Of a stretch of DNA of 64,000 bases, positions 1,830 to 64,000 are shown in pieces. Below the pieces are notes generated by a model. That model was not told where the DNA came from and did no database searches. It saw only the letters and a list, made by a program, of their open reading frames with translations. Source of the DNA: Asterias rubens (Eukaryota); assembly GCF_902459465.1 (NCBI RefSeq), contig NC_047079.1, positions 7,192,001-7,256,000 of the forward strand, given 5' to 3'. The position numbers were made by a program, and so were the translations under genes. Position 1 is the first letter of the stretch; each line of letters starts with the position of its first letter.

Positions 1830-4800
1830 ATGGCTACAACAACAGCATACAGCCTTTGGAGGATGTTCATCTTAGTTACATTACTTCTATCGTGTGTACT
1901 GCGGCAATCTCAGGCTAATTTCACATTCTCGTTGAATGGCCAGAATTTGAATGTGCACGTGGACGGAATACAGGTACGCATTGTTTTACTGTTTTGAATA
2001 TTGTACACTTTATTTCTTGAACAAATTACGTTTTCTGTAGTAAAACTGCATGCATGGTGTATGGTTTATTTAAATCAAGTTTATTAAATTAATTTAAACT
2101 CGCACTTTATTTACTTACTTAATGAAAACAGTACATAGCCAAAGCAAAAGTCACAGAGCGCCCCCTTGTGGAATAACCTCAGTCAATAAAAATTACGAGT
2201 TGGCATTTGGTTGCTAATTGTGGGAAAGTTTTGTGTGGCTGATTCTGATAATAATAACCGCGATCTCAGACTTGAAATCAAGTCTAACCATCCTACTGCA
2301 TAATTATTCCCTACAGGTGATCGCCCATTCTCCCGGCACCCCCTTCCTGTTCGTTGGGAGTGGAGTGTCCTCGTTCAAGGGACACCTCGGTAATTTCGTC
2401 ATCAAGGACTACGTGGAGGAACGAATTGCATTGAAAAATGTCACCGTTATCGATGATGCGGAAGGGATGATGCGAGTCCAGTTCCATAGAGACGGAACCA
2501 TGAAGGTATTGTTATGGAACTTTCTTTTTGATGATCTTCCCGCCAAGGTGATACACAGGCCTAAACGCCGAGCTACAGCAACAGCCAACCTCTCTCGTAC
2601 AAAGACCAGTCTTCTCACTCTTGGTGTATCCCAACATAAGCATAAAATAACAAGCCTGTGAAAATTTGAGCTTAATATTGGTCACCGAAGTTGCGAGAAA
2701 ATGATGAGAGAAAAAAACACCCTTGTTGGACGAATTTGGGTGTGCTTTCAGATACGAATAAAAGACTAGAAGTCATTTATTATTCTAGTGAGAAATTACC
2801 CCTTTCTCAAAATCTATGCTACTTCAGAGGGAGCCGTTTCTCACAATGTTTTACACTTTCAACAGCTCTCCAATGCTCGTTACCAAGTCCGTTTTTAAGT
2901 TAATATTTGTTTAGAAATTACCAAACCTGTACCTTCCATTTTTTATTTAACGTATTATGATTTTATGAATAAAAAAATTGGCACAGTGCATCACGAAAAG
3001 AAACCAGACGCCATAAAGTAAGGGGTTAACCCCGGTGTCACTGGTTTACTTGAAGAAACCTTTTTACATCTCCTCGGGCTTTCGAGCTACATGTCACTTT
3101 GTTCCAATACCAGAAATATTATATTTAAAAGCTTTAGGTGATAGTCTGATTATCAGGAATGACCCATCAGAACTACATGCTGTTCATTTTAACGTGTACC
3201 AAGCGAAGTGCAAGGATTTTTCTTATTTTTGTTTTGTTTTTAATCTTATCATGTTACAGACAACGGTTACTTTCACTAAAGAGAACAGCAGTCTCGGTGA
3301 CGTCATAACTTTTGAGGACCTTCCCGGTGACGTCAATCACATCTGGGTACGACTACTTGCTGATGAGAAGGAGCACGTTTACGGCGCCGGGGAGCAGTTT
3401 TCTTACTTTGACCTCAGAGGTCACAACTTCCCGTTGTGGATTCAAGAGCAGGTGTGAACTTCCGGTTTAAATTGCTTTGTGGAATTTCCTAAGTTGCATG
3501 CAAGAAAGTATTTTATTAATAACTTCTTTAAAAACCCTTTTTCACAAAACTAACTAGCCTGTTGGGCGCTACTCATGCATGAATCAATAACTTCTCCAAA
3601 ACTTGTTTTCCAAAACTCATTAGGGCGTTGGGCGTAACAAGTCAACTGAAGTAACATTCGAGGCGGATCGACGTGACGGTGGGGGCGGGGACTACCACAC
3701 CACCTATTGGGCCGAACCAACTTTCACCTCCTCTAGGAAATACTGCTGCCATTTCGACACCACGAGTTATTCCGAGTTGGATTTCCGTTACCCGGAGTTT
3801 CACGAGGTCCAGATCTGGAGCAATAAGCCTGGCAAGATCTTCTTCGGGGCGAGCGAGACGTTCACCGGCCTCGTCGGGAAACTGACGGCGTTCCTTGGTC
3901 GGCAGCCTGCCCTACCGGAGTGGACTTATGATGGCGCCATTTTGGGTGTTCAAGGAGGCACGGCGGCCATGTTGGATTACCTTAAATATGCACAGGTATA
4001 AGGCTATGTCCGAAATGGCGGCTACGGTTACAGCTACGGCTTGATCGCCGCTTCATCGTGCGTTGAAGTAGACTTCTTAAGCCCTTAGCAACAGTCGTAG
4101 CCGTAGCTGTAGCAATCACTTCGGATATACAGCCTATGAGAGCGTTGATTTTGACCTCAAATCACATTTTAAAAAAATAAAAAAAATTAAAAAATCTGCC
4201 GTTTTGGTCAGTAAGAACACAGTGTCAGTATTTTTTAATCGTAACTACTGTTTAGAATTAAAAGTATTTTGTATGTTTATTCCAGGGAAATTCAACTTAT
4301 GTGACTGGTTTGTGGATTCAAGATTGGGTCGGTCGAATCAAAACTTCGTTCGGATCAAGATTATTCTGGAACTGGGAATGGGACAAGAAACAATACCCTG
4401 ACTTGGACATTGAGATTGTGAGATTGAAGAAGGAAGGGGTGAGAGTCTTCGCCTATATCAACCCGAACCTGAACCGCGAGGGGGGTCTGTTCAAGGAGGC
4501 AGATGAAAAGGATCTTTTGGTCAAGAATTCTACGGGAGATACTTACGTTGTAGATTTCGGGGAATTCTTTTGTGGAATTGTTGATTTGACCAACCCGACA
4601 GCTGTAGAGTGGTATAAGGGCGTTATCACACGAAACATGATTGATTTGGGGTTCGGTGGATGGATGGCGGACGTTGGGGAGTACCTCCCAACAGATGCCG
4701 TGTTTTACGGCGGGCAGGCCGGGGAGGCACTCCACAACGAGTGGCCCGTTCTGTGGGCTAAACTCAATCGTGAGGTGGTGGAGGAGGCGGGTATGGTGGG

Positions 4801-5500
4801 CGATATCCTGATCTGGATGAGGGCAGGTTTCAGCGGTTCTCAGGAACACACCATCGTCACTTGGGCGGGAGATCAGTTCGTAGATTTCAGTCTTGCAGAC
4901 GGGTTGGCATCGGTCATACCGGCGGCTCTCTCGCTCGGTATGACCGGGTTTGGGCTGACGCATTTTGACGTGGGAGGTTTCACGTCGCTGTTCGGCATCG
5001 GTCGGACAGAAGAGCTCCTGCTACGCTACGCCGAATGTGCGGCCTTCACTCCCGTCATGAGGACGCACGAAGGAAATAGACCCGCGGAAAACTGGCAGTT
5101 TTATTCCAGCTCGGAGACAAGCGTTAAGTTTGCCCGTCAGAGCAAAATATTCAACATGCTGAAGGACTACACAATTTCTGTAGTCCAAGAAAACACCGAC
5201 TACGGTATTCCTGCTCAACGCCCTCTATTTATGCATTATGCAAATGATGAGCGGTCTTTCTCAATTAAATATGAATATTTATACGGCCGTGACCTTCTGG
5301 TTGCCCCTGTTTATGACGAAGGGGTGGAATCGTGGTGGGTGTACCTCCCTCCTGACAACTGGGTGTTTCTCTGGGACGGCAATGAGTACAGCGGTGGTGA
5401 CGTCCAAGTATCAGCTCCAGTCGGACAGATTCCCGTTTTTTATAGGAAGGGTTCCCCCTGGACTCAAGTCTTCAAAGAAATTGCAAAAAGTAAGGGGTAG
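1830..5500 (+). CDS. GH31 alpha-glycosidase, sulfoquinovosidase (YihQ)-like, with N-terminal signal peptide; 5 exons, ~703 aa
   Basis: Exons 1830-1973, 2317-2505, 3260-3451, 3624-3995, 4286-5500; all GT-AG, phase 0, total 2112 nt. Motifs match E. coli YihQ as recalled: EQGVGRNK, GGDY, LGVQGG, WIQDW, GSRLFWNW, nucleophile WMADVGEY (4661-4684), acid/base WAGDQ (4862-4876), DVGGF, RTHEGNRP. N-terminus MATTTAYSLWRMFILVTLLLSCVLRQSQA looks like a signal peptide. Confidence 0.88.
2600..2935. mobile_element. Degenerate family A-like MITE in glycosidase intron 2
   Basis: Contains GGTGTATCCCAAC, CCTGTGAAAATTTGAGCT, GTTGCGAGAAAATGATG and GAGGGAGCCGTTTCTCACAATG segments. Further partial copies at ~12000-12170 and ~48510-48680. 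Confidence 0.65.
4002..4134. mobile_element. Short palindromic MITE just after the donor of glycosidase intron 4
   Basis: GGCTATGTCCGAA...TTCGGATATACAGCC ends with internal GCTACGG/CCGTAGC inverted units. Confidence 0.6.
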
Positions 5501-6717
5501 TAAATGGATTTATCTTCATTTCATGTTCTAGTTCTTTCCATCCATACACTACTGCCCAACAGCTTTATTTTGAACCTGCATCTCTTTGCCCTCTACATTT
5601 TCACCTCCATCTTACAATCTAGACTGCTTTTATAAGAGTTATCAATTCCTACCTCGGCTCTGGATGAGTATTTGCCATCTTTATTTATCTTCTTGTAGCC
5701 CCTTGTCAAGTGACCTCACAGGGCGTGGCCCTCAAACAGGCGTGGCCATATAAAAAGGCGTGACACTTGAAAGAGCTTGGCTCCTTAATACCCCACAAGA
5801 TTCACTCTGATTGCATTTTGACATCATAATTGCAATCATTGCTCCCAAGTTATAATAATTTCGTCACCTTCCATAACTTTTGTCTGCAGCCAAAGACTTT
5901 GCATCGAGCAGTAGCAGGGCGCTCAGTTTTAAAGTTGTTGCATTGATGTCAGTCGTCTTCGTGGGAGGATGGGTTACCTTCAGACGGCTATGATCAACCT
6001 TCTGTACCAGAGAGCACTTTGCCTTTTTTTATTCACGCTATACCTCCTTGGTGTAGACCAAAGACGAGCTCCTAACTCTTGTTTTTGAGATATATAATAC
6101 ATTTTTTAACAATGAAGTGTTAACGTTTAATGAGCCTTCGATATGACAAATCTCATCCGGAAGTCGCATCCAGAATGTTTCTTGAATGGCGGGAATTCTG
6201 GAAGTTTAAAAGAATACAGACCTGAATGGATCTCATTTTTATGTTAAAGATTTTATAATAATTTTTTTTTTAAATATTTTTAAGAATTTGAATCCTTTAA
6301 TAATGAATAAATAATGGTATTATTCATTACTATGTCGACTTGGCTGCTTTTGTTGCACAATGTTTACCTGTTTTTGTTTGTTGTGCTGTTAGCCTTCTTT
6401 CGATAAAGACTGCTAGAGTAGAAAGGTCATTTGTTTTGGATAATAAAGTCTTATTTCACAACGCACTGGAATGCATAACAAAAAACGAAGAGTCTGTACG
6501 TATAGGATTTATGGTACAGTTCTCCCTAAATTGATTTTATGTTATTGTAACTTCTATATACATTTTTTTAACTATCCTGAACAAGTTCAAGTTTTATGGC
6601 AGAATTTTGTTAAATTATTGAATGGTATTGATTACAACCCAAAACGGCATTACAATTTTGCTAAAACTTTCTGCAAAGATGGATTTTATCGACATGAGTA
6701 ATTTTTTCGAAAATTAA

Positions 6718-14900: not shown

Positions 14901-17446
14901 ACACATCAGACATCAGTGACACAAACCTTCAATCCTTTCAGCTTGAATTTTACTTTAGTGTCAAACAATATCTCCCAATGCATCTTTGGAAATAATTTGG
15001 TTGTGCCTAATATCGAGTCGAGACTATTTGAGGTGCGGCTAGTCAAGTGATTAATTTCACTAGTCGCCCAGGCTTAGTATTTAGTGATTTTTACTGTCTT
15101 AAGAAGGGGTTGTTTGGAAGGAAATCAATGCTGGTTGCGGTGCATTTAGGTTTGGGCAAGGGAAGGATGTTCAGAAGAAGAGTCTTTAAAGTTAAGGTGA
15201 TCTATTGTAGGGTTGAGAAACTTCAGACTTGTTTGCTTGTTTCAGGCTTTGCATTGTCACAATATAATCACGATGGCAAATCTGGCTTGAATTCTATTTC
15301 ATTCATTTTCACTTTGCGAAATGGCAGGAATAGCCCAGATTTCACCTCAAGATTGTATTCTGTTAAAATGCACAAGTTTGTTTTCATTCAATATTTGTAG
15401 AGTATTCTTAGTTGGTTGTTATTTATTGGAAACTTCCGGGCATGGCAATAATGGTCGGGGTTTTTAAATTAATTTTTGTTCCATTTTGTGAGCTAAACAT
15501 GTCACTATTTTATTTTGTGAGCTCAAACTTGTGAGTATGTAGGCAGTAGTTGTTGAAGATATAACTTTGAAATTAAACCTTTTAAATATTCAAACTCACC
15601 ATCTTTATACTGACCTAATTTTTAACGTCACAAAACGGATCTAAGAATGTGTTTCGTTTCATGTGCATGTTGTCATCAATCTGTGGCCTTGCTAGGTCGT
15701 ACTTTTAATTTGTTGTTAGCACTGCACTTAACCCCTCAGCCCCTCCCTCCTGGCTGCACAGCTCTGAAGGAAGGGAATAAGCTGGCTCTTACCTATCCAG
15801 CAGGCAGAAATGTACCTTTGTTGTGCATGTGGTGAGATAAGGGTAGTCATTGGTAAATGCTACCCTATGGTAAACTAAGAGCAATGATTGTTCAGACGTG
15901 TATGAACTGATGTGGTGATATTTGTATTATTGTAGTTGATTTAATATTGAATTGAACTTAATTTGCATTTTGTCATGGTGTTTGAACTCAACATGGAGTT
16001 GTTTCACATTGTCTCGTCCACATTTAAGTTTACATAAGATCACTCGTCATACTATTTTATATTCCTTGAAGAACTCTTTATTCCCATCCAATCCCATTCC
16101 TCACTGTCTTTGCCAGCATTTTAACAGGTGCCTCTGAAAAGATAATTGGTTGATGTTTCAACCTGCCAGTAACCCATCCCATCTAAACCGTCGTCATCTG
16201 CTATCGGCTTTCCTTTTACCCTCTAACCTCCCTGATACTAACTTTCCCATAATGTGGTAAAATGAAGCATTAGCTCAGCTTGGTCAGAGCGTGTGACCCT
16301 GTGAGGTCACACAGGCCGTGGGTTCGAATCCCGCATGCTCCAATGTATCCACATTACATGGGATCTCAAAACTTTCGTCCATCCCATTTCCCTTTTCAGC
16401 CTTTCTTTCCCACATCTCTAGCTCATCTCAGAATTACAGTTAACCCTACCATCATTGCTTTTATCTATTTATTTATTTATTTATTTATTTCATTTGTACA
16501 TAATAATAATTTATAGAGTGCATAAGCAGCGGCATCAATGCGCAAACAATAACATTCTTTAGCTACACATATAGAATATTGAGAAAATTATTACAAAAAT
16601 GCAGGAACAACATTAGGCCTAAGTTAAAAAGTACAAAACTGTTGACACCAGCAAACTCTTAGGGCTCGAATTCGGTGAAAAAATCCAAAGGCTTGTAGCT
16701 CAAACTTTTACTGGACCAGAATTTTGAACAAAAAATCTAGCTTTATTTTAAAAAGAATAATGACATTAGTGCTCAGATTTGCATGCTTTTGATTGTGATT
16801 TTGGTCCAGTAAAGTCATACTTAACTTAACTCACTGGATGATGAAAGGGTTTAAACCAAGAGCAGACTGCGGAGAATTGAAGTGGCAGGGGATAATGTAC
16901 TTACAAATATTTATTGTACATAAATTATATATTCTAATTTCCTTCTATTAGCTCTATGGTATGGTCATTGGTCATAAACCATCATGTTTTTTTACGTCAG
17001 TCCATTGTGTTTTTCATCCATATTTAAAATTGATATTGGATTAAATCAAATCATTTTGTTTTTAGGTGAAAATATTAAACACTTTCTCCAATTTCCCTAG
17101 ACTAAAAAAGAACTCCCTCTAAACTTTCTTAGTTTAAAGGGACAGACTGCTGGTCAAGTTCTAACACAAGCTTTACCCTGTTGTCTCGCAGGATGAAGCA
17201 TTCGGACTCTGGAAGGAGCAATGGGGTCACATCTACGAGGAAGGTTCCCCATCTCGGCAGATCATCAATCACATCCACGACACCTTCTACCTGGTCAATC
17301 TGGTGAACAATGACTACATCAACGGTAAAGATCTCCTCTTTGAGGTCTTGGAGAGGATGCTTGTGAGGCGTGAAGAGAGACAGAGAGAGGAGACTGAAGG
17401 GCCTGATATGGATGAGGAGATTTGTACAAAGAAGCTTAAGATGTAG
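8972..17446 (+). CDS. MTHFR: Methylenetetrahydrofolate reductase; 11 coding exons, ~672 aa
   Basis: Exons 8972-9207, 9525-9763, 10904-11023, 11656-11849, 12268-12422, 12541-12738, 12916-13132, 13386-13568, 13956-14054, 14536-14658, 17192-17446; phases consistent, 2019 nt. Motifs [64 protein letters not shown]. Confidence 0.97.
16264..16342 (+). ncRNA. tRNA-like element with non-canonical anticodon arm (pseudo-tRNA or SINE head) in the last MTHFR intron
   Basis: Acceptor GAAGCAT/ATGCTCC (one mismatch), D arm GCTC..GAGC, T arm GTGGG-TTCGAAT-CCCGC, A and B boxes intact. The anticodon region forms an 8-bp stem GTGTGACC/GGTCACAC with a 6-nt loop CTGTGA. Confidence 0.6.
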
Positions 17447-29237: not shown

Positions 29238-31114
29238 TCAAGGACTCCCGCAAACTTTGCAAACCTGGAAATTCCCAAAGCTATGAAACACCCAGTCAGC
29301 ATGGACGTTATGTTTGGCGGCGATGGAGGCCCAACGGACGGTGAGTGGGTCGGGGTCCTGCCAAGTGAAGAACGCTGGCTGACCTCTCTTCCCTACCATC
29401 GTCAGACCGTTGTAGTTCATCACCCAGAAATGGTGGTACTCATCTACTGACATCAATCCTAGTAGATCAACCTGGTGTTGAATCTGGCACAGGTGACACC
29501 TTCGTATCCGGACCTTATCATCATTCTTCTCGCCAAAGGCTAAACAAATCAAAAAGTGAACAAACTTAACTCTACTTTGAGATTCTACACAATTTCCATT
29601 TTTCTCGGCATTGTTGATAAAAAAACAGGAATCGACATTTATTTTTGTGCATAAATACCATTTTTCTGGGATAAGTTGGAGAAAAAAAATAGACTGCTTT
29701 TCAAAATTCATGCGTAATTCCCTTTTTTCTGGGATTTGTTGAGAACAAACAGCTCTACAAGATTCATGCACAATTGTTATTTTTTCTCAGCATTGTTGAT
29801 AAGAAACTGGACACAACGTTTCAATATTTATGCACAATTCACGTTTCTGCTTGAATTTGATGGGATTTGATGACGTGAAACTTAACTAAACAATTGCTGG
29901 CAGCTGGCACAAACAAAGAACTCAAAACAAAATTCTCACCAATCACGTACATTCTTCGATGGTAAACTCCTTTCTCCTCAGCCAACCCTACGTACACCGT
30001 TGAGCTTGCCCGTACTGAGAACACCATAACAAACACTTCTGCTGGGTCGAATGGCGGGAAAATGAACCTGTAATTGGCATCCGGGCTGGATGGTATCACG
30101 TATTCAAATGGTGAGGAATTACCTGTAATCGATCATTGGCGTATGTGGTTACCAGTGAAATAATGTACCCTGGGGGAACAACTCCGTCATACGAGGCATC
30201 TTTTACAACTTAAAGGCAACCTACTGCCACATGCATACCACATGACCACTTCGGTAGCACATGGGTCGTTTTTCAAACAATTACAAACGGTTACAAACGG
30301 TCCCCATCCATGTGAACATTGAATTGTGAATGGCTTTTTTTTTCATGGAGATTAACTGGAACTGGTTTCCTGTAAATGTGACATGGTCTTAAGGTAAACC
30401 GACTAACAACTAAACTCATTGGAAGTCTTTGAAGGATTTTGGACTTTATGTATTAAGACCAAACTGTGTTCAAAATGTGTAATGGGATTGTGAAGGAATA
30501 GAACAGCTTTTTCCAATGCATTCATATTTTGATGGAGGTACGAATTTGTAGAAAGTTTCTCACTGTGTAAAAATAAAGCTACTAAATTGATTGATCACTT
30601 ACATGTTGTCAAATTGGACTGTGATCTCCATTTGGTGTCATTATCTTCCTGTTGAATGAAACAGTCAAAACAAAATGTCAACTATAAGTATTAAATTTAA
30701 CACTTGGAGACAAAGAGTGCTTAACAATGATATTGTGCTATAATAATTGGCGAACAAAATGGAGACTAGAGGTTAAGATATGATGACCTTTGACACTTCG
30801 TAGTAGGTGCAATTTACGTCCACCTGGAGGTCACCGGGATACTGTTCAGCCGTAACATTATGAAGTTCACACCGTTGGGCGTCCTTGCAGAAACTGAAGG
30901 CACTACATGCAGTGTCTTGGAGGCATAACCCGGCGCAGGATAGCGGCGACCACTCGCTCTGCCACGAATACGTATGATCTTGAAGTACTTGATTTGGTGC
31001 TGGACAAGTGGTCGTTGATGTAACAACACCTTTAAACTGCAGTAGAATTACTAAGAAGACATGACTTATAGGCCTAATGGTAAACTTTGATTGGTGTACT
31101 TTGATCAGCTTCAT
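29238..31114 (-). CDS. Secreted protein: PAN/Apple domain plus FAMeT-like (Methyltransf_FA-type) domain; 4 exons, ~285 aa
   Basis: Exons 31114-30788, 30648-30603, 30122-29940, 29539-29238; phases 0/1/1, 858 nt. Hydrophobic N-terminal stretch, PAN-type pattern CAGLCLQDTACSAFSF...C-L, then FSVRASS...IRRC...DEYHHFWV...VGKRG..FFTWQDP resembling the FAMeT domain. The first donor (AAG|GTCATC) is weak. Confidence 0.7.
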
Positions 31115-31934: not shown

Positions 31935-33323
31935 TTAGTGCAATGTAAACCATTCAGGAGATACCACCCTTCCACCTGTCATCTCTGACCACATGTCGAT
32001 CATGCTTTCATCTTTTACAAACTGGTGCATTCGAAATCCTTCATGTCTTGGGTTGTCCTTTCTGTAATGGACGAGTCTAAGCTCAGACTCAGGGTCAAGG
32101 GTCAAAGTGTCACTTCCAACTTTAACTCCATGGATTTTGAAATAGTGCACGTTGATTGGTCGAATGATGCATTTGTCGCGTCCTCGGTTCTCCTTCGTAG
32201 CACTTGGAGTTCTCCACGGGTTCCTCTCGAAAACAGTTTTAGCTTCGACAACTTTTTTCTTGGCGTAAGGTGGCCTGCCAAAGAACCAGTTCCGAATCCG
32301 AACGGTTCCTAAAGAACTCAAGTACGGATCTTGTAGATAATCAGTAATCTTAGTTCTGACCGGATCCATGGGTTGGACGAATTCATCAACGTCTACTTTT
32401 AACATCCAGTGCGTGTTGTGACGGTGTCGCCATAGACAGTCATTTTCATGAGCTATTTGAACTTCTAAGTAAGTCTTATTTGGACTCGGTGTATGAGCCC
32501 ATGGTATGATAGTCAGGAACCCAGACTCAATGTACCCTTCAAGATCACCTGACATCGTTGCGTTGGGATCATTGTCGTAGATATAGACATGTTCAACACC
32601 AAGTTTCTTGTAATAATACATCCAATCTGGGATGAACTTTGACATGTCTTTGACCATAGTGCAAAGACTCAAAAACCGCTGCTCTTTCTCAGTGAGGCAA
32701 ACCGGTACGCCCATGTAAGCGTACTCCGGATTGGACAGCAGACGAAAGTTTACTCTGAACCGACCAATAGTGTGCTGTTTGACTTGGGTCATGAAGTGAT
32801 GCGGCACAGGGCATGTGATGATAATGAGGTATTGCGGGTAACCACCGAAACTTAGAAAGTCTTTTACAATAGGATCAGTGATACTCATCTCGCCGTTAGG
32901 AAATTCACAGATGTACCTCTCTGCGTCCCAATCATCTTCATAGCTCCGGACTCCTACAAAAACGACTTCATCTCTTGTGGACTCCACAAAGGCGGAGTGG
33001 AGAGTAGGGAGCTTCGAGCAGCTGAGTTTCTCGCTAAGGTAGCAACCGCTTGCTGAGTTTTGAAGATTTCTGGTCCCAGAGCTGTCACACAAAAACGTCG
33101 AAAAACTAGTGGACAGCTTGAACTTTTCCCAACTATCCTTTCCCCACTGTATCCAAGGTTTGATTCCCCTAGAGTTGGCGTCTTGTGTTGCAGGAAACGA
33201 GAGGAGGAAAACGAAGAGCAACCATGCTGCTAGTACAACGAACAGCGCCCTCTTACATTGGGAGCGCTTGGAGCGTAACATGATTGGCTGGGCGTGCCGA
33301 ATAATGGCAGGGGATTCATTCAC
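31935..33323 (-). CDS. Glycosyltransferase family 92 / DUF23-like type II membrane protein; single-exon CDS, 462 aa
   Basis: Uninterrupted ORF with a signal anchor (LFVVLAAWLLFVFLL), LSLCTMVKD..FIPDWMYYYKKLGVEHVYIYDN, QIAHENDCLWR and WMLKVDVDEF (DxD). Probable non-coding upstream exon with donor near 34018. Confidence 0.82.
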   Translation of the reverse strand: MNESPAIIRHAQPIMLRSKRSQCKRALFVVLAAWLLFVFLLSFPATQDANSRGIKPWIQWGKDSWEKFKLSTSFSTFLCDSSGTRNLQNSASGCYLSEKLSCSKLPTLHSAFVESTRDEVVFVGVRSYEDDWDAERYICEFPNGEMSITDPIVKDFLSFGGYPQYLIIITCPVPHHFMTQVKQHTIGRFRVNFRLLSNPEYAYMGVPVCLTEKEQRFLSLCTMVKDMSKFIPDWMYYYKKLGVEHVYIYDNDPNATMSGDLEGYIESGFLTIIPWAHTPSPNKTYLEVQIAHENDCLWRHRHNTHWMLKVDVDEFVQPMDPVRTKITDYLQDPYLSSLGTVRIRNWFFGRPPYAKKKVVEAKTVFERNPWRTPSATKENRGRDKCIIRPINVHYFKIHGVKVGSDTLTLDPESELRLVHYRKDNPRHEGFRMHQFVKDESMIDMWSEMTGGRVVSPEWFTLH

Positions 33324-35585: not shown

Positions 35586-38500
35586 ATGTCTGACCAAAAC
35601 CACCAAAATAATTTCCCAGAGATGAAGAAAGTTACTTTTGCCATCTTCGGTTTGGGCCGAGCTGGTACCATCCACTTCGGCAATCTCATACGGAACCAGC
35701 GTGCCGTTATACGGTACATTGTGGAGGAGAATCGTGCAAGGGCTGAACAGGTGCTACAGGAACTTCAGTTTGATATTGTTAGTAAAGAGTGCCAACTCGT
35801 CACTGCTGCAGAAGCTGACAAGGTCTACCAAGATAAAAGGTGTGTATAGTGCCAATGATTCATGAAGTGCCCCCTCCCTTTTTTTCTCGGCTTGGGGCCC
35901 ATGTGGTTGAGCACTGCGGAGCCTGTGAGTCGAGGTTAGAAAAAAACATGGCGCTGATCCTTGGATTGTATCATATGGCGGATCCAGGATTTTATCTCGT
36001 ATTATTATAATACAGGGAATACAACGAAGCACACAGGACTGTGTGTGGGTGGGGTGGGGGGGGGGTCAGGGGGCGGCCCTGTGGGCGACATGCTATGATG
36101 AGCCTTTGAACAGTCGGAAACGCCCACTAACACCCCCAGTACCAAACACACATTACCCCGCCCCACCCAACACACGCGTGCACAGTTTTTTCCCTATCCC
36201 AATCAGGTTAATATGCAAATCTGTGGTGCTTATAGGTCTACCACTTTGTATACCATTGTTTTCCATTATGAGTGTTTTAATTACGTTTATTTCGCAGCCG
36301 TTGTGGATGCTCCCATCGATTTTCTTAAAACACATTGGGCTGTCCAAAATGCAATTTGATATTTTGCACCTGAGTCTATAGAGCTAACATTCAATCAAAA
36401 ATGGTTTGTATATGCCTAATATTAATACACTGAGTGCAAACGTTATCCCTTTGTTTTGCCTGATGCACTGGGCACCCAGCAGTGTGTCCAAACACACTTC
36501 CCCCCTGAATATTGTGTGTGTGTTGTATAGAGCAAGGAAGAGAGTGTTATGCACTATTAATTGACACAATGGTAGACGGTGCGTCAGGGACATAACCCCT
36601 GTGCCTAAATGTTGTTGTTGTATAAAAGCATTGGACTGTTTCGACCAGATATGCCTGGCCATTCAACTTCAGTAGTTTGTTTCTCGAGGGTGGGCAGTTG
36701 GATTACGAGGAAGAATGATTTATTTTTATTTTGATGAGTGAAGTTATCAACACAAAATGCAAATTCGGGCAGTAAAACGAAGATAGTGATCGGATTTGAA
36801 GGTATTGAAGACAAATTAAAACTTGGACAAAAATATGTTTTTTTTTTTCTAGTAACCTCGTTCTACAATGAGCAACCCTTGTTAAGGCAAAATTGTTTGG
36901 TATTTTGTCTGGCACATTTTGTTTACAGACTCTAGCCCTGTTTTTATTTTATATTTCGATTACAAAGTTTAGAATTTACCTTTTTACTCATCAGTGTCGA
37001 TGCAGTTATTGTTTGTACACACACGGACTCCCATAAAGAAATCGTGCAGAGCTCACTCCAAGCAGGTTTGTAGACGTGACGTCATTAGTCTCTGTCTTAC
37101 TATTTTATTATTTTAACTTACGTCATGTGGTCATGATCAGTATTCGTTATTTTGATGTGTTTTATAAGTTATTCTTCTGAAAGACATGGCTGCTGTCAAA
37201 TACAGATGCCTGAAGAATAACAATTACACCACAAATAAACACACATTTCCTGCCCATTACACATTTTACATGAGTGTTATTTTAACACCTTATAGTGTTC
37301 ATTTGGGGGTATCTGTGACAACGCCCATGGTGTAAATTTGTGTTTTTAATTGTTTAAATTTTTTTACCCTTTCAGGTAAATCTGTGTTTTGTGAGAAGCC
37401 CGTTGCCACCGAGTTGAGTGATACGAAAGCTTGCTACGACCTCGCTGAGAAAAACGGACAGTTTCTCTTCTGTGCGTTTAATAGGTATAGTATTTATCGA
37501 CTGATCAGGGCGGGTTTCGTTCACAACATTGATTCCAAAATTAGTTGATAAGTAAATATTTAACAGTTTTTTTTTCTATTTTTACGATGCTCGAATATAA
37601 GATGATTAATTTATTTGTTTATTTATTCATTTATTTATTTGTAGACGTCAAGACCCTTCCATTCGTGAGCTCCATAAACGTGTTCGAAGAGGAGATCTGG
37701 GCCAGATCCAATCGATCAAGACTTGCTCAAGAGATAGCCCCATTCCAACAAAAGAATACCTCAAGATATCAGGTAAAGATTTTCAAATAATCTTCCCGAT
37801 ATTCGTTGTCTACTCAATGTCTTGTCTTACATACTGAATAAGACAGTAATACACGATGCATTCATGCACAAGCTATAAGTATAACATTCGATCGAAAGTG
37901 CAGAAATTTTTTAGTGAGATGTGAGCTTGTCCCAGTGTTCTCTCGCATAATTTTTTTATTTTTGTAAACTTTTGCCCATAAAAACATTGTGGGGGTAGGT
38001 CCAAAATGTAATATTATTATGTCTTTCATTAAAAAAGAAACCTGCCCACAATGTAGCTCTCGTACCTTACGTACGAACTGACAAGTATACATACCTCTGA
38101 CCAATCATAACACAGATATGGAAAACTTACGTCAAAGTAAGTTTATAACGGTGTCCAATGAAATCATTGGGTATGTAAGGCCAGTGCCTGTATTTACCAT
38201 TATGACACATCCACCGGGGGAATAATCCCTCGTGCACCTGCTAAATTAACTGGTGTCTCCGTTGACACCTCTTATGACAGGCGGTATCTTTCACGACTGT
38301 GCCGTTCACGACATCGATGTAGTCTGTTGGATTCTTGGCGAGTTCCCTGACGTCGTTTACACGCAGGCACACGCCTTCCACAAGAACGTTGCTGAGCTGG
38401 GTGATGTCGACCAGGTCAACATAACAATGAAGTTTGCCAGTGGTATCATCGCTACCATTGACTTAAACAGAGAAGCATCCTACGGATACGACCAGCGTAT

Positions 38501-39807
38501 TGAGGTAAACTATCAGTATTCGAAATTCATTGAAGGCCAAAGTACACACGGACAAGGGTGTCATGACCGAGCAATGTATAGGGCACTTAGTTCTGGTGGT
38601 TTTCAAAGTCATCGGGGGTGGGTTCGAGTCCCGGTCATTAGGTCTGCACTTATATTCTTGAACGAGACACTTCACTATAAGGCGTGGCAGTACGATCAAA
38701 AGTATTTTGTTTTCTCTCCACAGGTTTTCGGCTCAAACGGGATGCTTGAAACGAGAAATAATAGCAAGATAAACCTTGTGGGTCACCTTGGTAAGAATGG
38801 CGCCTCTTCAGATCCAGTTCCCTTCTCATTTCCACAGAGATACGCCGACGCATACAGGGAGGAACTGGACTATTTTATAGACTACGTATTAGGTAAAAGA
38901 AAACAGTACATTTCTTTGGGTTGAACAAAGAACAATCTTGAACAGAACTAAGTCCTAAGCCTGCCACCTCCGGATTGTGCCGACGTGCAGGAGATGCTGT
39001 GTCCCCTTCCCCTCATAATAATAGGGTCTTTTCGTTTTCGACGACGGATGGTTCTGCGACGGTTGTTCAGCTAAACGTTGTCGTTTTCAGCACAACGAAG
39101 ATTCATCCAAAGTACTGTCGTAAAAATTGAGGGACGACCGTCCTCAGAGCCGACGCATGCGCAGATGACGCCAAATGTCATCTTTACCGTCGCAGAACCA
39201 TCTGTCGTCGAAAACGATAAGTCCCTTTACCGGCGAACTGTGTACAAGCTTCTTCTGAAAGCGCCCTCTTTTGAATCCTACTCCTCCAGCCCACGTTAGC
39301 TTAACTTTCCATGTGGGGCGGGGCGGGGGGGGTGCAGAATCTTCGAGGACAGATGTCCCTATATTAAACACAAGAGCTCTGCAAACTATGTACTTTTATA
39401 GTAGGATGGTAAACATATCAAAATAAATAATTATTATTCTATGGAATGCTCACAAACACAGGCCGTGTTCGTGATGTGAAACTGGTGGAATGTCGTAACC
39501 TAAGTGTGAACTTTGATTTAACATAGCACGTGGTAGCAGATGATATTTCCTAACATCCCATTCCACTAGTGACGTGATTTGTGGACACACCTCTTTTAAA
39601 AACATGCATTGAATAGCGCGGGATAGGTGCATTGAAAAGTCATACATTTCAGCCCAAGATCATCCATGATTCTGTTTTATTCCTGCAGGGCTAGACAAGC
39701 ACGTGGAGGTAACAAGAACTGATACTATAATGGCGACAATTATTGCTGAAACATGTATGATGTCCTACCACAAAGGAATCCCAATCAAGTTGAAGGACGT
39801 CATGTAA
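35586..39807 (+). CDS. Gfo/Idh/MocA oxidoreductase, myo-inositol 2-dehydrogenase (IolG)-like; 7 exons, ~357 aa
   Basis: Exons 35586-35839, 36995-37065, 37376-37484, 37645-37772, 38281-38504, 38724-38892, 39689-39807; 1074 nt. Rossmann GLGRAG, VFCEKP, AFNRR.DP, SRDSP, GGIFHDCAVHDID (catalytic D..H), YGYDQRIEVFG, FPQRYADAY. Confidence 0.88.
39023..39226. mobile_element. MITE with ~40-bp TIRs in the last intron of the IolG-like gene
   Basis: AGGGTCTTTTCGTTTTCGACGACGGATGGTTCTGCGACGGT pairs with ACCGTCGCAGAACCATCTGTCGTCGAAAACGATAAGTCCCT. Confidence 0.75.
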
Positions 39808-62300: not shown

Positions 62301-64000
62301 TGAAAGCAGCTGACATTGACTTTATCAACGAGCTAGCTTTGTACAAAGATGTGCGCTCTCTGCACATGGTACCACATTATTTTGTTGCACCGTTTAAAGG
62401 CACAACTCAAGCTAAGATTGCCGTCACTAGAGTAGACGTTGTAGACAGACTCTTAAAGGATCTTGGGGTTGACAAACATAGGTAAGCTCTTTTGGTTTAA
62501 AGAAAACGGCAAAACGCCATGTCGTATATGTTACATTTGTGAGCGGGTTTAATTGTTTTTCTTTCATCTGTATGGCTTGTTCTTCATAGCTTGTCTTTGC
62601 TGAGTGGTTTAGCACACCAGACTCTAGGTCTGGTGTTTCTGATCAGCAGAGTGTAGGTTCGAGTCCCAGCTTGACCATTATTGTTTTGTCCTTTAGAAAA
62701 TCAAATGCAACTAACTTTTTAAATAATTCGTAGTTTCGTCTTTAATTTTCACTTTAAGAACTTATATTCATCTTTAAACTGCCAGTCATGGTTTTGATAA
62801 ACCATTATTGTTGTCACAGTTGTTTACTTTAATCTTGACACTTGAATCTTTCAGTGGTTTGACCGTTGACAATGTGATGACGTTTGCAAAGCGCGCTTTG
62901 GAGCATACGGCCGGTGAGGTCAGGGAAGCATCCGTTCATCTGATCTTGGAGTTATATCGGATAAAATCGGAAGCCGTCCGATCGCATCTCCCCTCGGAAG
63001 ACGATCATAAGACGTTAAAGAATCCACTCTATCATAAGATCTTTGATGGTATGGATAAAGTTGATGGGAAACCCACCAAGGCGGAGAAAAAGGTATGTAC
63101 AAGTCAAAAACCAATTTTGTTTCGAAAAATTCACAAATTACAGGGATGATCGAGATTTGTCCCTATTTTTCCTTTTTGACCAATCACTTTACAATCATGT
63201 TTCCCGATGGCTAAAAGAGATCTTATTGTGGAATTTCTATCTGTTTAATTGTTTATCTGTACTTGCTGTGGCCCATGTGAGAAAATGGCTGACACCACGA
63301 CCAATGTTTTTTGCTAAATTATTACTATTTTTTATTCAATATTTGAAGGCCAAGGCTCAGAGTGACAAAGCATCCGAGAAGAAACGTAAACAAGCAGAGA
63401 TTGAAGAGCTTCAGCAACAGCTGGCTGACCTCAGAGCAGCCACCTTAGCACAAGGGAAAAATGTACGTCTCTTTCAGTCTTTGTTTGAATAAAAATGTTA
63501 AACAAAAGTTTCTTTATTGACTTTTAATTACTTCTGTCATAAATAATCAATGATTGTATTTCTTCTCAATTTCAGCCAGATGCTCCAGGGAAGAAGGGTC
63601 CAAAAGCTGGAAATAAAGGTAAGAGTGTCTCTTGGTGGATTTGGTTAATTGGGCAGTAACAAAGCCAGCTTCATTTCACACCAGGAGGGAACTTTTATGA
63701 AACTTGCATTTAATTTTTTATTTATTTCCATGCAATCTCACGCCTATACCTGTACTGTAACTGTGTTTCATAGATTGGGTTTTGTCATCTTAATGTTGAT
63801 TTGTAAGACTCCCTTAGTAAGGACTGCATCAGCATTTATTGATGTGTCGCTGCCCCAAGACCATCTCTAAGATGGATACCGACGCATCATAAATGCCCTT
63901 CATTTGTTATTATTACCTTTTTAAAAGTTGTTAAATTTTGCCTCTAGATCTGCCCAAGAAGCTGCCTCGAGCTCCAAGCATCGCTGAGCAATCCGACTAC
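55001..64000 (+). CDS. CEP104: Centrosomal protein of 104 kDa; 5' portion, truncated by window end
   Basis: Exons 55001-55205, 55512-55593, 56016-56154, 56645-56832, 57872-57981, 58127-58182, 58368-58523, 59464-59621, 60358-60547, 60882-61049, 61362-61496, 62291-62481, 62855-63092, 63349-63462, 63576-63618, 63948-end; phases consistent. N-terminus MPHKI...RFCLYPQEIVIQL...IRKLQLLAHQYLI, then ARELKSVHVDA, DDLAFDMYQDPEVAQIIRKL and TOG-like YSKNWSLREEAL. Confidence 0.94.
56357..56390. repeat. (AAT)n microsatellite
   Basis: About 10 AAT units in CEP104 intron 3. Confidence 0.9.
56973..57474. mobile_element. PIF/Harbinger-like MITE in CEP104 intron 4
   Basis: Ends GG(C/T).C.TTTCTGGGGCGGAA, long imperfect inverted arms, and TGA flanking both sides (56970-56972, 57475-57477) as a 3-bp TSD. 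Confidence 0.65.
59824..60065. mobile_element. Harbinger-like MITE (GGGCCCAATTTCAT ends) in a CEP104 intron
   Basis: Palindromic body GGGTCCAATTTCATAGAGCTGCT...AGCAGCTCGATGAAATTGGGCCC; partial copies at ~46045-46140 and ~9340-9425. Confidence 0.75.
60168..60288. mobile_element. Small Harbinger-like MITE
   Basis: Perfect TIR GGGGCCGATTTCACAAAG / CTTTGTGAAATCGGCCCC. Confidence 0.75.
62592..62676 (+). mobile_element. tRNA-derived SINE head
   Basis: GCTGAGTGGTTTAG A box and GGTTCGAGTCCC B box. Related B-box-plus-GACACTT fragments at ~38575-38690, ~57690-57790 (-) and ~59715-59825. Confidence 0.55.

What the first reader, a model, noticed from the sequence alone, without database searches (positions are those of the whole stretch)
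1830..5500. Intron-containing, apparently secreted sulfoquinovosidase in an animal genome
Seen: a complete 703-aa five-exon GH31 gene with intact catalytic Asp residues, a signal peptide and several N-glycosylation sequons (NFT, NVT, NSS, NKS, NST). Known: GH31 SQases such as E. coli YihQ release sulfoquinovose from the plant/algal sulfolipid SQDG, and sulfoglycolysis is described almost wholly in bacteria. The protein carries the YihQ-type segments EQGVGRNK, LGxQGG, WxQDW, RxxWNW, WAGDQ and RTHEGN, not the human GAA/MGAM-type WIDMNE. Inference: this animal may make its own digestive or lysosomal enzyme for sulfolipid, making a marine invertebrate a direct participant in the sulfur cycle. Four introns at the 5' end followed by one 1.2-kb exon would fit an old horizontal acquisition later gaining introns, but vertical retention is not excluded.
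Basis: partly seen in the sequence, partly recalled or inferred. Interest (0 to 1): 0.8.

Follow-up and report, generated by a model that had tools for sequence, protein, structure and literature searches.

The report
Starfish sulfoquinovosidase-like gene, already annotated
This is a real starfish gene for an enzyme of the bacterial YihQ type that probably cuts the sulfur sugar off algal sulfolipid, but public databases already name it so and a 2026 preprint describes the same gene family across aquatic invertebrates.

Summary
The gene does not end at 5500, though. A donor after 5489 joins a sixth exon (5890-5994), giving 734 aa. That product is 100% identical to RefSeq XP_033642279.1, 'sulfoquinovosidase-like [Asterias rubens]'.

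The sixth exon adds a hydrophobic C-terminal tail, so the enzyme is probably tethered to a membrane (GPI anchor or single helix) rather than freely secreted.

The protein belongs with YihQ: about 57% identity over the catalytic half, a confident model that fits four solved sulfoquinovosidases at TM 0.97, and a position inside the bacterial sulfoquinovosidase clade.

The 31 animal sequences form one clade that splits into protostomes and deuterostomes. Introns 1 and 2 sit at the same positions in a brachiopod, a limpet or amphioxus. The gene was therefore already in the bilaterian ancestor with introns; any bacterial origin is older than that.

Two pocket departures are new details. The sulfonate-site Tyr508 is Phe531, a change made five separate times in animals. 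Val429 replaces a Phe after the nucleophile; among 190 aligned sequences only this one has Val there.

dN/dS against A. amurensis is 0.12. Activity is untested. The idea was anticipated by Uchida et al. (bioRxiv 2026).

The parts
1830..1973 (+). Exon 1 (aa 1-48); the predicted signal peptide is aa 1-29 (1830-1916), with likely cleavage after SQA
   Evidence: The AlphaFold model shows helix 2-24, then a low-confidence stretch at 24-27.
2317..2505 (+). Exon 2 (aa 49-111), N-terminal beta-sandwich
   Evidence: The intron before it (phase 0) lies at the same position in Lingula and Patella.
3260..3451 (+). Exon 3 (aa 112-175), end of the GH31 N-terminal domain (PF13802)
   Evidence: The intron before it (phase 0) is shared with Branchiostoma, Lingula, Lytechinus and Ptychodera.
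3624..3995 (+). Exon 4 (aa 176-299), GVGRNK motif and start of the barrel, including Q285 (YihQ Q262)
   Evidence: phmmer against YihQ gives E=3e-37.
4286..5489 (+). Exon 5 (aa 300-700 plus the first base of codon 701): TIM barrel and C-terminal beta domain. It holds Q311 (4319-4321), R324 (4358-4360), W327 (4367-4369), nucleophile D428 (4670-4672), V429 (4673-4675), acid/base D495 (4871-4873), F531 (4979-4981) and H560 (5066-5068).
   Evidence: PF01055 E=8e-43 and PF21365 E=4e-22; YihQ E=2e-150 with an ungapped alignment, query residues 5-399 against YihQ 281-675; residue mapping.
5490..5889 (+). Intron 5 (phase 1).
   Evidence: Donor and acceptor are conserved in A. amurensis, while the intron length differs (400 against 641 nt). 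Ptychodera has an intron at the same column and phase.
5890..5994 (+). Exon 6 (aa 701-734 plus TGA): a Ser-rich linker, then the hydrophobic tail VVALMSVVFVGGWVTF (5934-5981), then RRL. This is a GPI-attachment signal or a short membrane anchor.
   Evidence: the most hydrophobic 15-residue stretches in the protein start at aa 711-717; linker 705-707 has pLDDT below 50, then helix 704-733.

Best explanation
Window 1830-5994 holds the six-exon Asterias rubens gene for XP_033642279.1, the starfish member of the 'animal sulfoquinovosidase' clade. The 734-aa product has three parts: a cleavable signal peptide, a GH31 body that superimposes on bacterial sulfoquinovosidases, and a short linker followed by a 16-residue hydrophobic tail. 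Inferred course: it enters the secretory pathway, is N-glycosylated, and ends up tethered by a GPI anchor or a single helix. The catalytic domain would then face the gut lumen, the cell surface or the inside of a lysosome-like compartment. There it most likely works as a retaining alpha-glycosidase, with D428 as nucleophile and D495 as acid/base. R324 and W327 would hold the C6 sulfonate and Q311/Q285 the sugar hydroxyls, so that sulfoquinovose is released from sulfoquinovosyl glycerol or diacylglycerol of algal origin. Shown here: gene structure, clade membership, fold, conservation of seven of the eight tabulated residues (six of the seven that the literature calls key), purifying selection, and vertical inheritance since the bilaterian ancestor. 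Inferred only: substrate, localisation, type of anchor, tissue, and any role in sulfur cycling. The sulfonate pocket is not canonical (Phe531 for Tyr508; Val429 for the Phe after the nucleophile), so affinity or specificity may differ from YihQ.
For: The gene model is 100% identical to the RefSeq protein. The same six exons occur in A. amurensis. Exon 5 against YihQ, BmSQase and E. rectale SQase gives E about 1e-150, against about 1e-39 for the best non-SQase GH31. The AlphaFold2 model has pLDDT 92.3 and pTM 0.89. It fits the solved sulfoquinovosidases 8R56, 5OHT/5AEE, 6PNR and 5OHS at TM 0.96-0.98 (normalised to the target) and rmsd 1.1-1.7 A, while the next GH31 folds reach about 0.64. The residue pattern is QQRWDD-F-H against YihQ QQRWDD-Y-H. 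In the IQ-TREE tree the 31 animal rows form one clade (SH-aLRT 100) inside a 58-row clade with YihQ and Bacillota enzymes (99), with SmoI-type and other bacterial lineages outside it. dN/dS against A. amurensis is 0.117, from 46 synonymous and 20 non-synonymous differences, and F531 is present in both species. Signal peptides and hydrophobic tails occur in nearly all animal homologues and in none of the bacterial ones. An independent preprint reports signal peptides, GPI or TM predictions and digestive-organ expression for this clade in molluscs and amphioxus.
Against: No animal enzyme of this clade has been assayed. Tyr508, part of the Q/E-RWY motif that recognises the sulfonate through a water molecule (PMC12780224, PMC8006165), is Phe here. 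Tyr is present in 134 of 137 close bacterial homologues. Val429 replaces a Phe that is present in 69 of 69 canonical sequences and in 167 of 190 wider ones; only this sequence has Val. The window holds no sulfoquinovose-catabolic gene, and the preprint found none in a giant clam. No expression data for this species were available to me. The adult starfish is a predator (my own knowledge), whereas the preprint found the gene missing from generally carnivorous lineages.
Confidence: 0.62

Rival explanations
1. Retuned or relaxed specificity. The enzyme is active, but because of Tyr508Phe (and in A. rubens Phe406Val) it no longer prefers sulfoquinovosides. It would act instead on another alpha-glucoside-type substrate, or bind the sulfonate only weakly.
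For: F531 and V429. Phe at this position is what the alpha-xylosidase YicI and several non-canonical bacterial subgroups carry. Tyr to Phe arose five separate times in animals but in only 1 of 137 close bacterial homologues.
Against: Arg324, Trp327, Gln311, Gln285 and His560 are all kept. The gene is under strong purifying selection and its branch length is not inflated. Tyr to Phe keeps the ring and removes only a water-mediated hydrogen bond. The scan of five Phe-versus-Tyr contrasts showed no conserved position with a repeated change to the same residue apart from 508 itself.
Confidence: 0.25
2. One reading: a soluble, secreted 703-aa five-exon enzyme, from a horizontal acquisition that later gained introns only at its 5' end.
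For: The five exons are right, and a read-through product would end at 5500. The clade nests among bacterial enzymes.
Against: The sixth exon is used in the RefSeq models of two Asterias species, its splice sites are conserved, and a tail exon in phase 1 is present in Ptychodera, Lytechinus and Branchiostoma. Introns 1 and 2 are shared across protostomes and deuterostomes. By my own arithmetic about 0.02 exact coincidences with Lingula are expected by chance, and 2 were seen.
Confidence: 0.05
3. A catalytically dead binding protein, a contaminant, or a recent bacterial insertion.
For: Another GH31 locus in this genome was noted by the scan as a pseudoenzyme (I did not test it).
Against: Both catalytic Asp and His560 are intact. 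The gene has five spliceosomal introns, animal neighbours and orthologues that follow the species tree.
Confidence: 0.03

Closest known systems
E. coli YihQ and Bacillus megaterium BmSQase (GH31 sulfoquinovosidases; PDB 5AED/5AEE/5OHT, 8R56)
   Same: About 57% identity over the catalytic half and 48% over the whole chain. Same three-domain fold (TM 0.97). Same nucleophile, acid/base, Arg-Trp sulfonate pair, Gln-Gln pair and His.
   Different: Tyr508 is Phe and Phe406 is Val. The starfish protein adds a signal peptide, six N-glycosylation sequons and a C-terminal membrane tail. Its gene has five introns and no sulfoglycolysis operon around it, whereas yihQ lies among yihO-yihV.
'Animal SQase' clade of Uchida et al. 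2026 (bioRxiv 10.64898/2026.02.11.705467); RefSeq 'sulfoquinovosidase-like' proteins of Patiria, Acanthaster, sea urchins, acorn worms, amphioxus and molluscs
   Same: It is a member of this clade and lies in the sea-star branch. It has the same signal peptide plus tail architecture and shares introns with other members.
   Different: Asterias (both species) carries Phe at the Tyr508 position, whereas Patiria and Acanthaster keep Tyr. A. rubens alone has Val429. The preprint calls the seven key residues 'well conserved' and does not report the recurrent Tyr to Phe change or the intron comparison.
Agrobacterium tumefaciens SmoI (PDB 5OHS/5OHY)
   Same: Same family, fold (TM 0.97) and RWY-type pocket.
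   Different: SmoI uses the Lys/Glu pair in place of Gln/Gln. The starfish protein has the E. coli-type Gln/Gln pair and is nearer to YihQ in the tree.
GH188 NAD+-dependent sulfoquinovosidases (SqgA)
   Same: Same proposed substrate.
   Different: An unrelated fold and mechanism (PMC10755693), so not relevant to this gene. The Gfo/Idh/MocA gene 30 kb downstream matched inositol dehydrogenases and no sulfoquinovosidase-named entry in the PDB sequence search.

Membership tests
GH31 sulfoquinovosidase (YihQ/SmoI subfamily) | GH31 three-domain architecture (N-terminal beta-sandwich, TIM barrel, C-terminal beta domain) | tested here: met
   PF13802, PF01055 and PF21365 hits. The model fits four solved SQases at TM 0.96-0.98.
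GH31 sulfoquinovosidase (YihQ/SmoI subfamily) | Catalytic nucleophile Asp405 and acid/base Asp472 | tested here: met
   D428 and D495.
GH31 sulfoquinovosidase (YihQ/SmoI subfamily) | Sulfonate-binding Arg301 and Trp304 | tested here: met
   R324 and W327.
GH31 sulfoquinovosidase (YihQ/SmoI subfamily) | Tyr508, third member of the RWY sulfonate motif (holds a water molecule) | tested here: not met
   Phe531, also in A. amurensis. Tyr is present in 134 of 137 close bacterial homologues and in 22 of 31 animal rows.
GH31 sulfoquinovosidase (YihQ/SmoI subfamily) | Gln288 (with Gln262) or Glu (with Lys), and His537 | tested here: met
   Q311, Q285 and H560.
GH31 sulfoquinovosidase (YihQ/SmoI subfamily) | Falls within the clade of characterised sulfoquinovosidases | tested here: met
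   It lies inside the 58-row clade with YihQ (SH-aLRT 99), with a SmoI-type (KERWDDYH) representative outside that clade but inside the next one. The tree came from IQ-TREE's quick search only.
GH31 sulfoquinovosidase (YihQ/SmoI subfamily) | Hydrolyses alpha-sulfoquinovosides but not alpha-glucosides | not testable with these tools
   According to the preprint, no animal member has been assayed.
Animal SQase clade (Uchida et al. 2026) | Signal peptide, a single PF01055 domain, usually a C-terminal GPI or TM tail, and a gene tree that follows the species tree | tested here: met
   SignalP and NetGPI were not available, so the signal peptide and tail rest on hydrophobicity and sequence pattern.

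The most novel reading that the evidence does not exclude
The repeated Tyr508 to Phe replacement in animal enzymes is an adaptive retuning of the sulfonate pocket and not neutral drift. It occurs in five lineages: Asterias, a sea-urchin paralogue, an amphioxus paralogue, caenogastropods and a springtail. Close bacterial enzymes almost never show it. The retuning could suit an acidic digestive or lysosomal setting, or the intact lipid rather than the glycerol glycoside. In A. rubens it is joined by a Phe to Val change next to the nucleophile that no other aligned sequence has.
Probability: 0.15. Interest if true: 0.5.

Novelty: already known. Interest (0 to 1): 0.3.

Why it matters
[quoted passage not shown] They would hand free sulfoquinovose to their microbes while keeping the glycerol or lipid part for themselves. 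That idea is already public: RefSeq names these proteins, Speciale et al. 2016 noted animal homologues according to the preprint, and Uchida et al. 2026 developed the case. This window therefore adds a confirmed member and no new concept. Three details are added here: a corrected gene end with a membrane tail; intron evidence that the gene was present, with introns, in the bilaterian ancestor; and natural Tyr/Phe variants, plus one Phe/Val variant, of the sulfonate pocket. These variants make ready-made comparisons for the first biochemical test.

Tried and rejected
1. Rooting the first tree with E. coli YicI alone put the very long outgroup branch inside the echinoderms. I treated this as long-branch attraction. 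I replaced it with a wider sample of 120 representatives and a distant subfamily as outgroup.

2. I looked for residues that change together with Tyr508Phe across five independent Phe-versus-Tyr contrasts. No conserved position showed a repeated change to the same residue other than 508 itself.

3. I sought mutagenesis data for Tyr508Phe. Speciale 2016 and Abayakoon 2018 are not held, and no held paper mentions Y508F in this enzyme.

4. DNA for the closest relative, P0001 (84% identity), was unavailable, and the Patiria isoform was not on record. I used A. amurensis instead for dN/dS.

5. I asked whether the downstream Gfo/Idh/MocA gene could be a GH188-type sulfoquinovosidase. It matches inositol dehydrogenases only, so I dropped the idea.

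6. A second copy in the window: tblastn finds only this gene.

7. The scan's earlier notes mention other GH31 loci in this genome but nothing on this one. They did not affect my reading.
Full report
**Observation**

Each has GT..AG borders and each is in phase 0. Read through to the TAG at 5498-5500 they give 703 aa.
- Every quoted motif is present.
- There are six N-X-S/T sequons.
- The N-terminus has a basic residue, the hydrophobic run MFILVTLLLSCVL, and SQA before the likely cleavage site.
- tblastn of the model against the window finds only this one copy.

**The gene end is wrong**

- 'AAA|GTAAGG' at 5489/5490 is a good splice donor, and 'TTTTGTCTGCAG|' ends at 5889.
- Joining 5489 to 5890 in phase 1 adds 34 residues...KEIAKTKDFASSSSRALSFKVVALMSVVFVGGWVTFRRL, and gives 734 aa.
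- This model is 100% identical over all 734 residues to P0123, which is RefSeq XP_033642279.1 'sulfoquinovosidase-like [Asterias rubens]'. An exact spliced alignment of that protein to its genomic locus returns the same six exons.
- A. amurensis has the same six exons with identical lengths and no indels. Its introns 2 and 5 differ by hundreds of bases. The donor and acceptor of intron 5 are conserved, and read-through stops within a few codons in both species.
- Ptychodera has a phase-1 intron at the same alignment column. Lytechinus and Branchiostoma have a phase-1 intron just before their own tail exons.

**What the tail means**

- The tail and the signal peptide hold the most hydrophobic 15-residue stretches in the protein.
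- Almost all animal homologues end in a similar hydrophobic stretch after a low-complexity linker. The bacterial enzymes stop right after the last beta domain.
- The layout is a run of small residues (SSSS), a six-residue spacer, 16 hydrophobic residues and then RRL. That fits a GPI-attachment signal or a short type I anchor, and I could not run NetGPI to decide.
- Either way 'secreted' should read 'secretory-pathway, probably membrane-tethered, catalytic domain outside the cytosol'. This localisation is an inference.

**Family**

- Pfam finds the three GH31 domains.
- Exon 5 alone matches E. coli YihQ at E=2e-150 in an ungapped alignment (query 5-399 against YihQ 281-675). It matches the B. 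megaterium and E. rectale enzymes equally well and the Agrobacterium enzyme at 1e-121. The best non-sulfoquinovosidase GH31 (YicI) reaches only 1e-39. Exon 4 matches at 3e-37.
- An AlphaFold2 model of the 734-aa protein from a 54-sequence alignment has mean pLDDT 92.3 and pTM 0.89.
- Foldseek places all four solved sulfoquinovosidases first, at TM 0.96-0.98 (normalised to the target) and rmsd 1.1-1.7 A. Other GH31 enzymes reach about 0.64.

**Active site**

I took the true YihQ sequence from E. coli K-12, where yihQ lies among the yihO-yihV sulfoglycolysis genes. The key residues map as follows:

| YihQ | A. rubens |
|---|---|
| Q262 | Q285 |
| Q288 | Q311 |
| R301 | R324 |
| W304 | W327 |
| D405 | D428 |
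| D472 | D495 |
| H537 | H560 |
| Y508 | F531 |

- The literature describes the sulfonate pocket as Arg301-Trp304-Tyr508(H2O) and the family signature as Q/E-RWY (PMC8006165; PMC12780224).
- Among 137 close bacterial homologues, 134 have Tyr and one has Phe.
- Among the 31 animal sequences, 9 have Phe, and on the tree this needs five separate changes: Asterias with its nearest relative, a sea-urchin paralogue, an amphioxus paralogue, caenogastropods, and the springtail Orchesella.
- A second departure is peculiar to A. rubens. Val429, next to the nucleophile, replaces a Phe present in 69 of 69 canonical sequences. In the wider set of 190, 167 have Phe and only this sequence has Val. A. amurensis keeps Phe.
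- I could find no measurement of a Tyr508Phe variant.
- The gene is not decaying. dN/dS against A. amurensis is 0.117, and its branch is no longer than those of the Tyr-bearing sea stars.

**Origin**

- With 120 diverse representatives added and a distant subfamily as outgroup, IQ-TREE (quick search, LG+C20 PMSF) joins all 31 animal rows in one clade (SH-aLRT 100).
- That clade splits into protostomes (95) and deuterostomes (95), with sea stars, sea cucumbers plus urchins, and acorn worms in the expected places.
- The clade lies inside a 58-row group with YihQ and Bacillota enzymes (99). That group is itself nested among SmoI-type and other bacterial lineages.
- Two ciliate sequences sit separately among the bacteria.
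- Exact exon mapping in six species gives the following for the A. rubens introns:

| A. rubens intron | Position | Shared with |
|---|---|---|
| 1 | after aa 48, phase 0 | Lingula and Patella, same column and phase |
| 2 | after aa 111, phase 0 | Branchiostoma, Lingula, Lytechinus and Ptychodera |
| 3 | after aa 175, phase 0 | Lytechinus; Lingula and Patella have an intron one base away |
| 4 | after aa 299, phase 0 | Lytechinus only |

- With 5 and 8 introns in roughly 2,200 possible positions, about 0.02 exact coincidences between A. rubens and Lingula are expected. Two were found (my arithmetic).
- The stretch that is one 1.2-kb exon here carries four more introns in Lingula and Patella. 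Amphioxus has three others there at different positions (plus two further unshared introns upstream of it), so the ancestral state of that part is open.
- The gene therefore stood, with introns, in the bilaterian ancestor and has been inherited vertically since. A bacterial source is likely but must be older.
- The neighbours are ordinary animal genes, DIS3L2-like upstream and MTHFR downstream, and MTHFR also follows the gene in A. amurensis.

**What is already known**

- RefSeq names this protein and its orthologues in many invertebrates 'sulfoquinovosidase-like'.
- Uchida et al. (bioRxiv, February 2026) report such homologues in 65 animal species across nine phyla, including Echinodermata.
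- They report predicted signal peptides, GPI or TM anchors in some echinoderms, and expression in the digestive organs of molluscs and amphioxus. They found no downstream catabolic genes in a giant clam, and they offer the same digestive and sulfur-cycle interpretation.
- Their work is computational. They state that the key residues are well conserved, and they excluded sequences with several substitutions. They report neither the recurrent Tyr to Phe change nor intron positions.
- According to them, Speciale et al. 2016 had already noted animal homologues.

**Verdict**

The finding is real and its family assignment is right. The gene model needs a sixth exon, 'secreted' needs qualifying, and the intron-gain scenario is not supported. 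One of the defining sulfonate residues is not met, and the central idea is already public. Whether this enzyme cleaves sulfoquinovosides is still untested. I put that at roughly 0.6, with a retuned specificity as the main alternative.

Noticed in passing
window 35586-38924 (+): A multi-exon Gfo/Idh/MocA oxidoreductase gene. It has a Rossmann exon with GLGRAG, an EKP exon and a C-terminal domain. In the PDB it matches bacterial myo-inositol 2-dehydrogenases (E about 1e-16) and no sulfoquinovosidase-named entry. No link to the GH31 gene is shown.
   Followed up: partly
window 31935-33323 (-): A single 461-aa ORF with a glycosyltransferase family 92 domain (E=4e-24).
   Followed up: no
window 29238-29771 (-): An ORF with a farnesoic acid O-methyltransferase-type domain (PF12248, E=3e-8).
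   Followed up: no
window about 8972 onward (+): An MTHFR gene begins about 3 kb downstream of the GH31 gene. The same neighbour follows the gene in A. amurensis, so local synteny is conserved.
   Followed up: partly
window 16263-16343 and 62597-62678 (+): ARAGORN reports two odd tRNA-like hits, one with a four-base anticodon and one 'tRNA-Pyl' CTA. They are probably false positives or tRNA-derived repeats.
   Followed up: no
protein representatives P0166-P0312: 49 of 120 representatives show the pattern QQQWDDYH (Gln at the sulfonate Arg301 position), and about ten more also have Gln there, mostly with Phe for Tyr. Most are 650-930 aa and many begin with signal- or lipoprotein-like N-termini. 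This looks like a sister subfamily of unknown specificity.
   Followed up: no
P0151 (Paramecium sonneborni) and P0136: Two ciliate-type sequences with the full QQRWDDYH pattern group together inside the bacterial clade, apart from the animals. This suggests a separate acquisition.
   Followed up: partly
P0002 (Acanthaster planci isoform X2) and P0003: A. planci has two near-identical loci on one contig. Isoform X2 lacks the stretch that corresponds to exon 3 here, and P0003 starts at that exon. These are likely annotation or splicing artefacts of a tandem pair.
   Followed up: no
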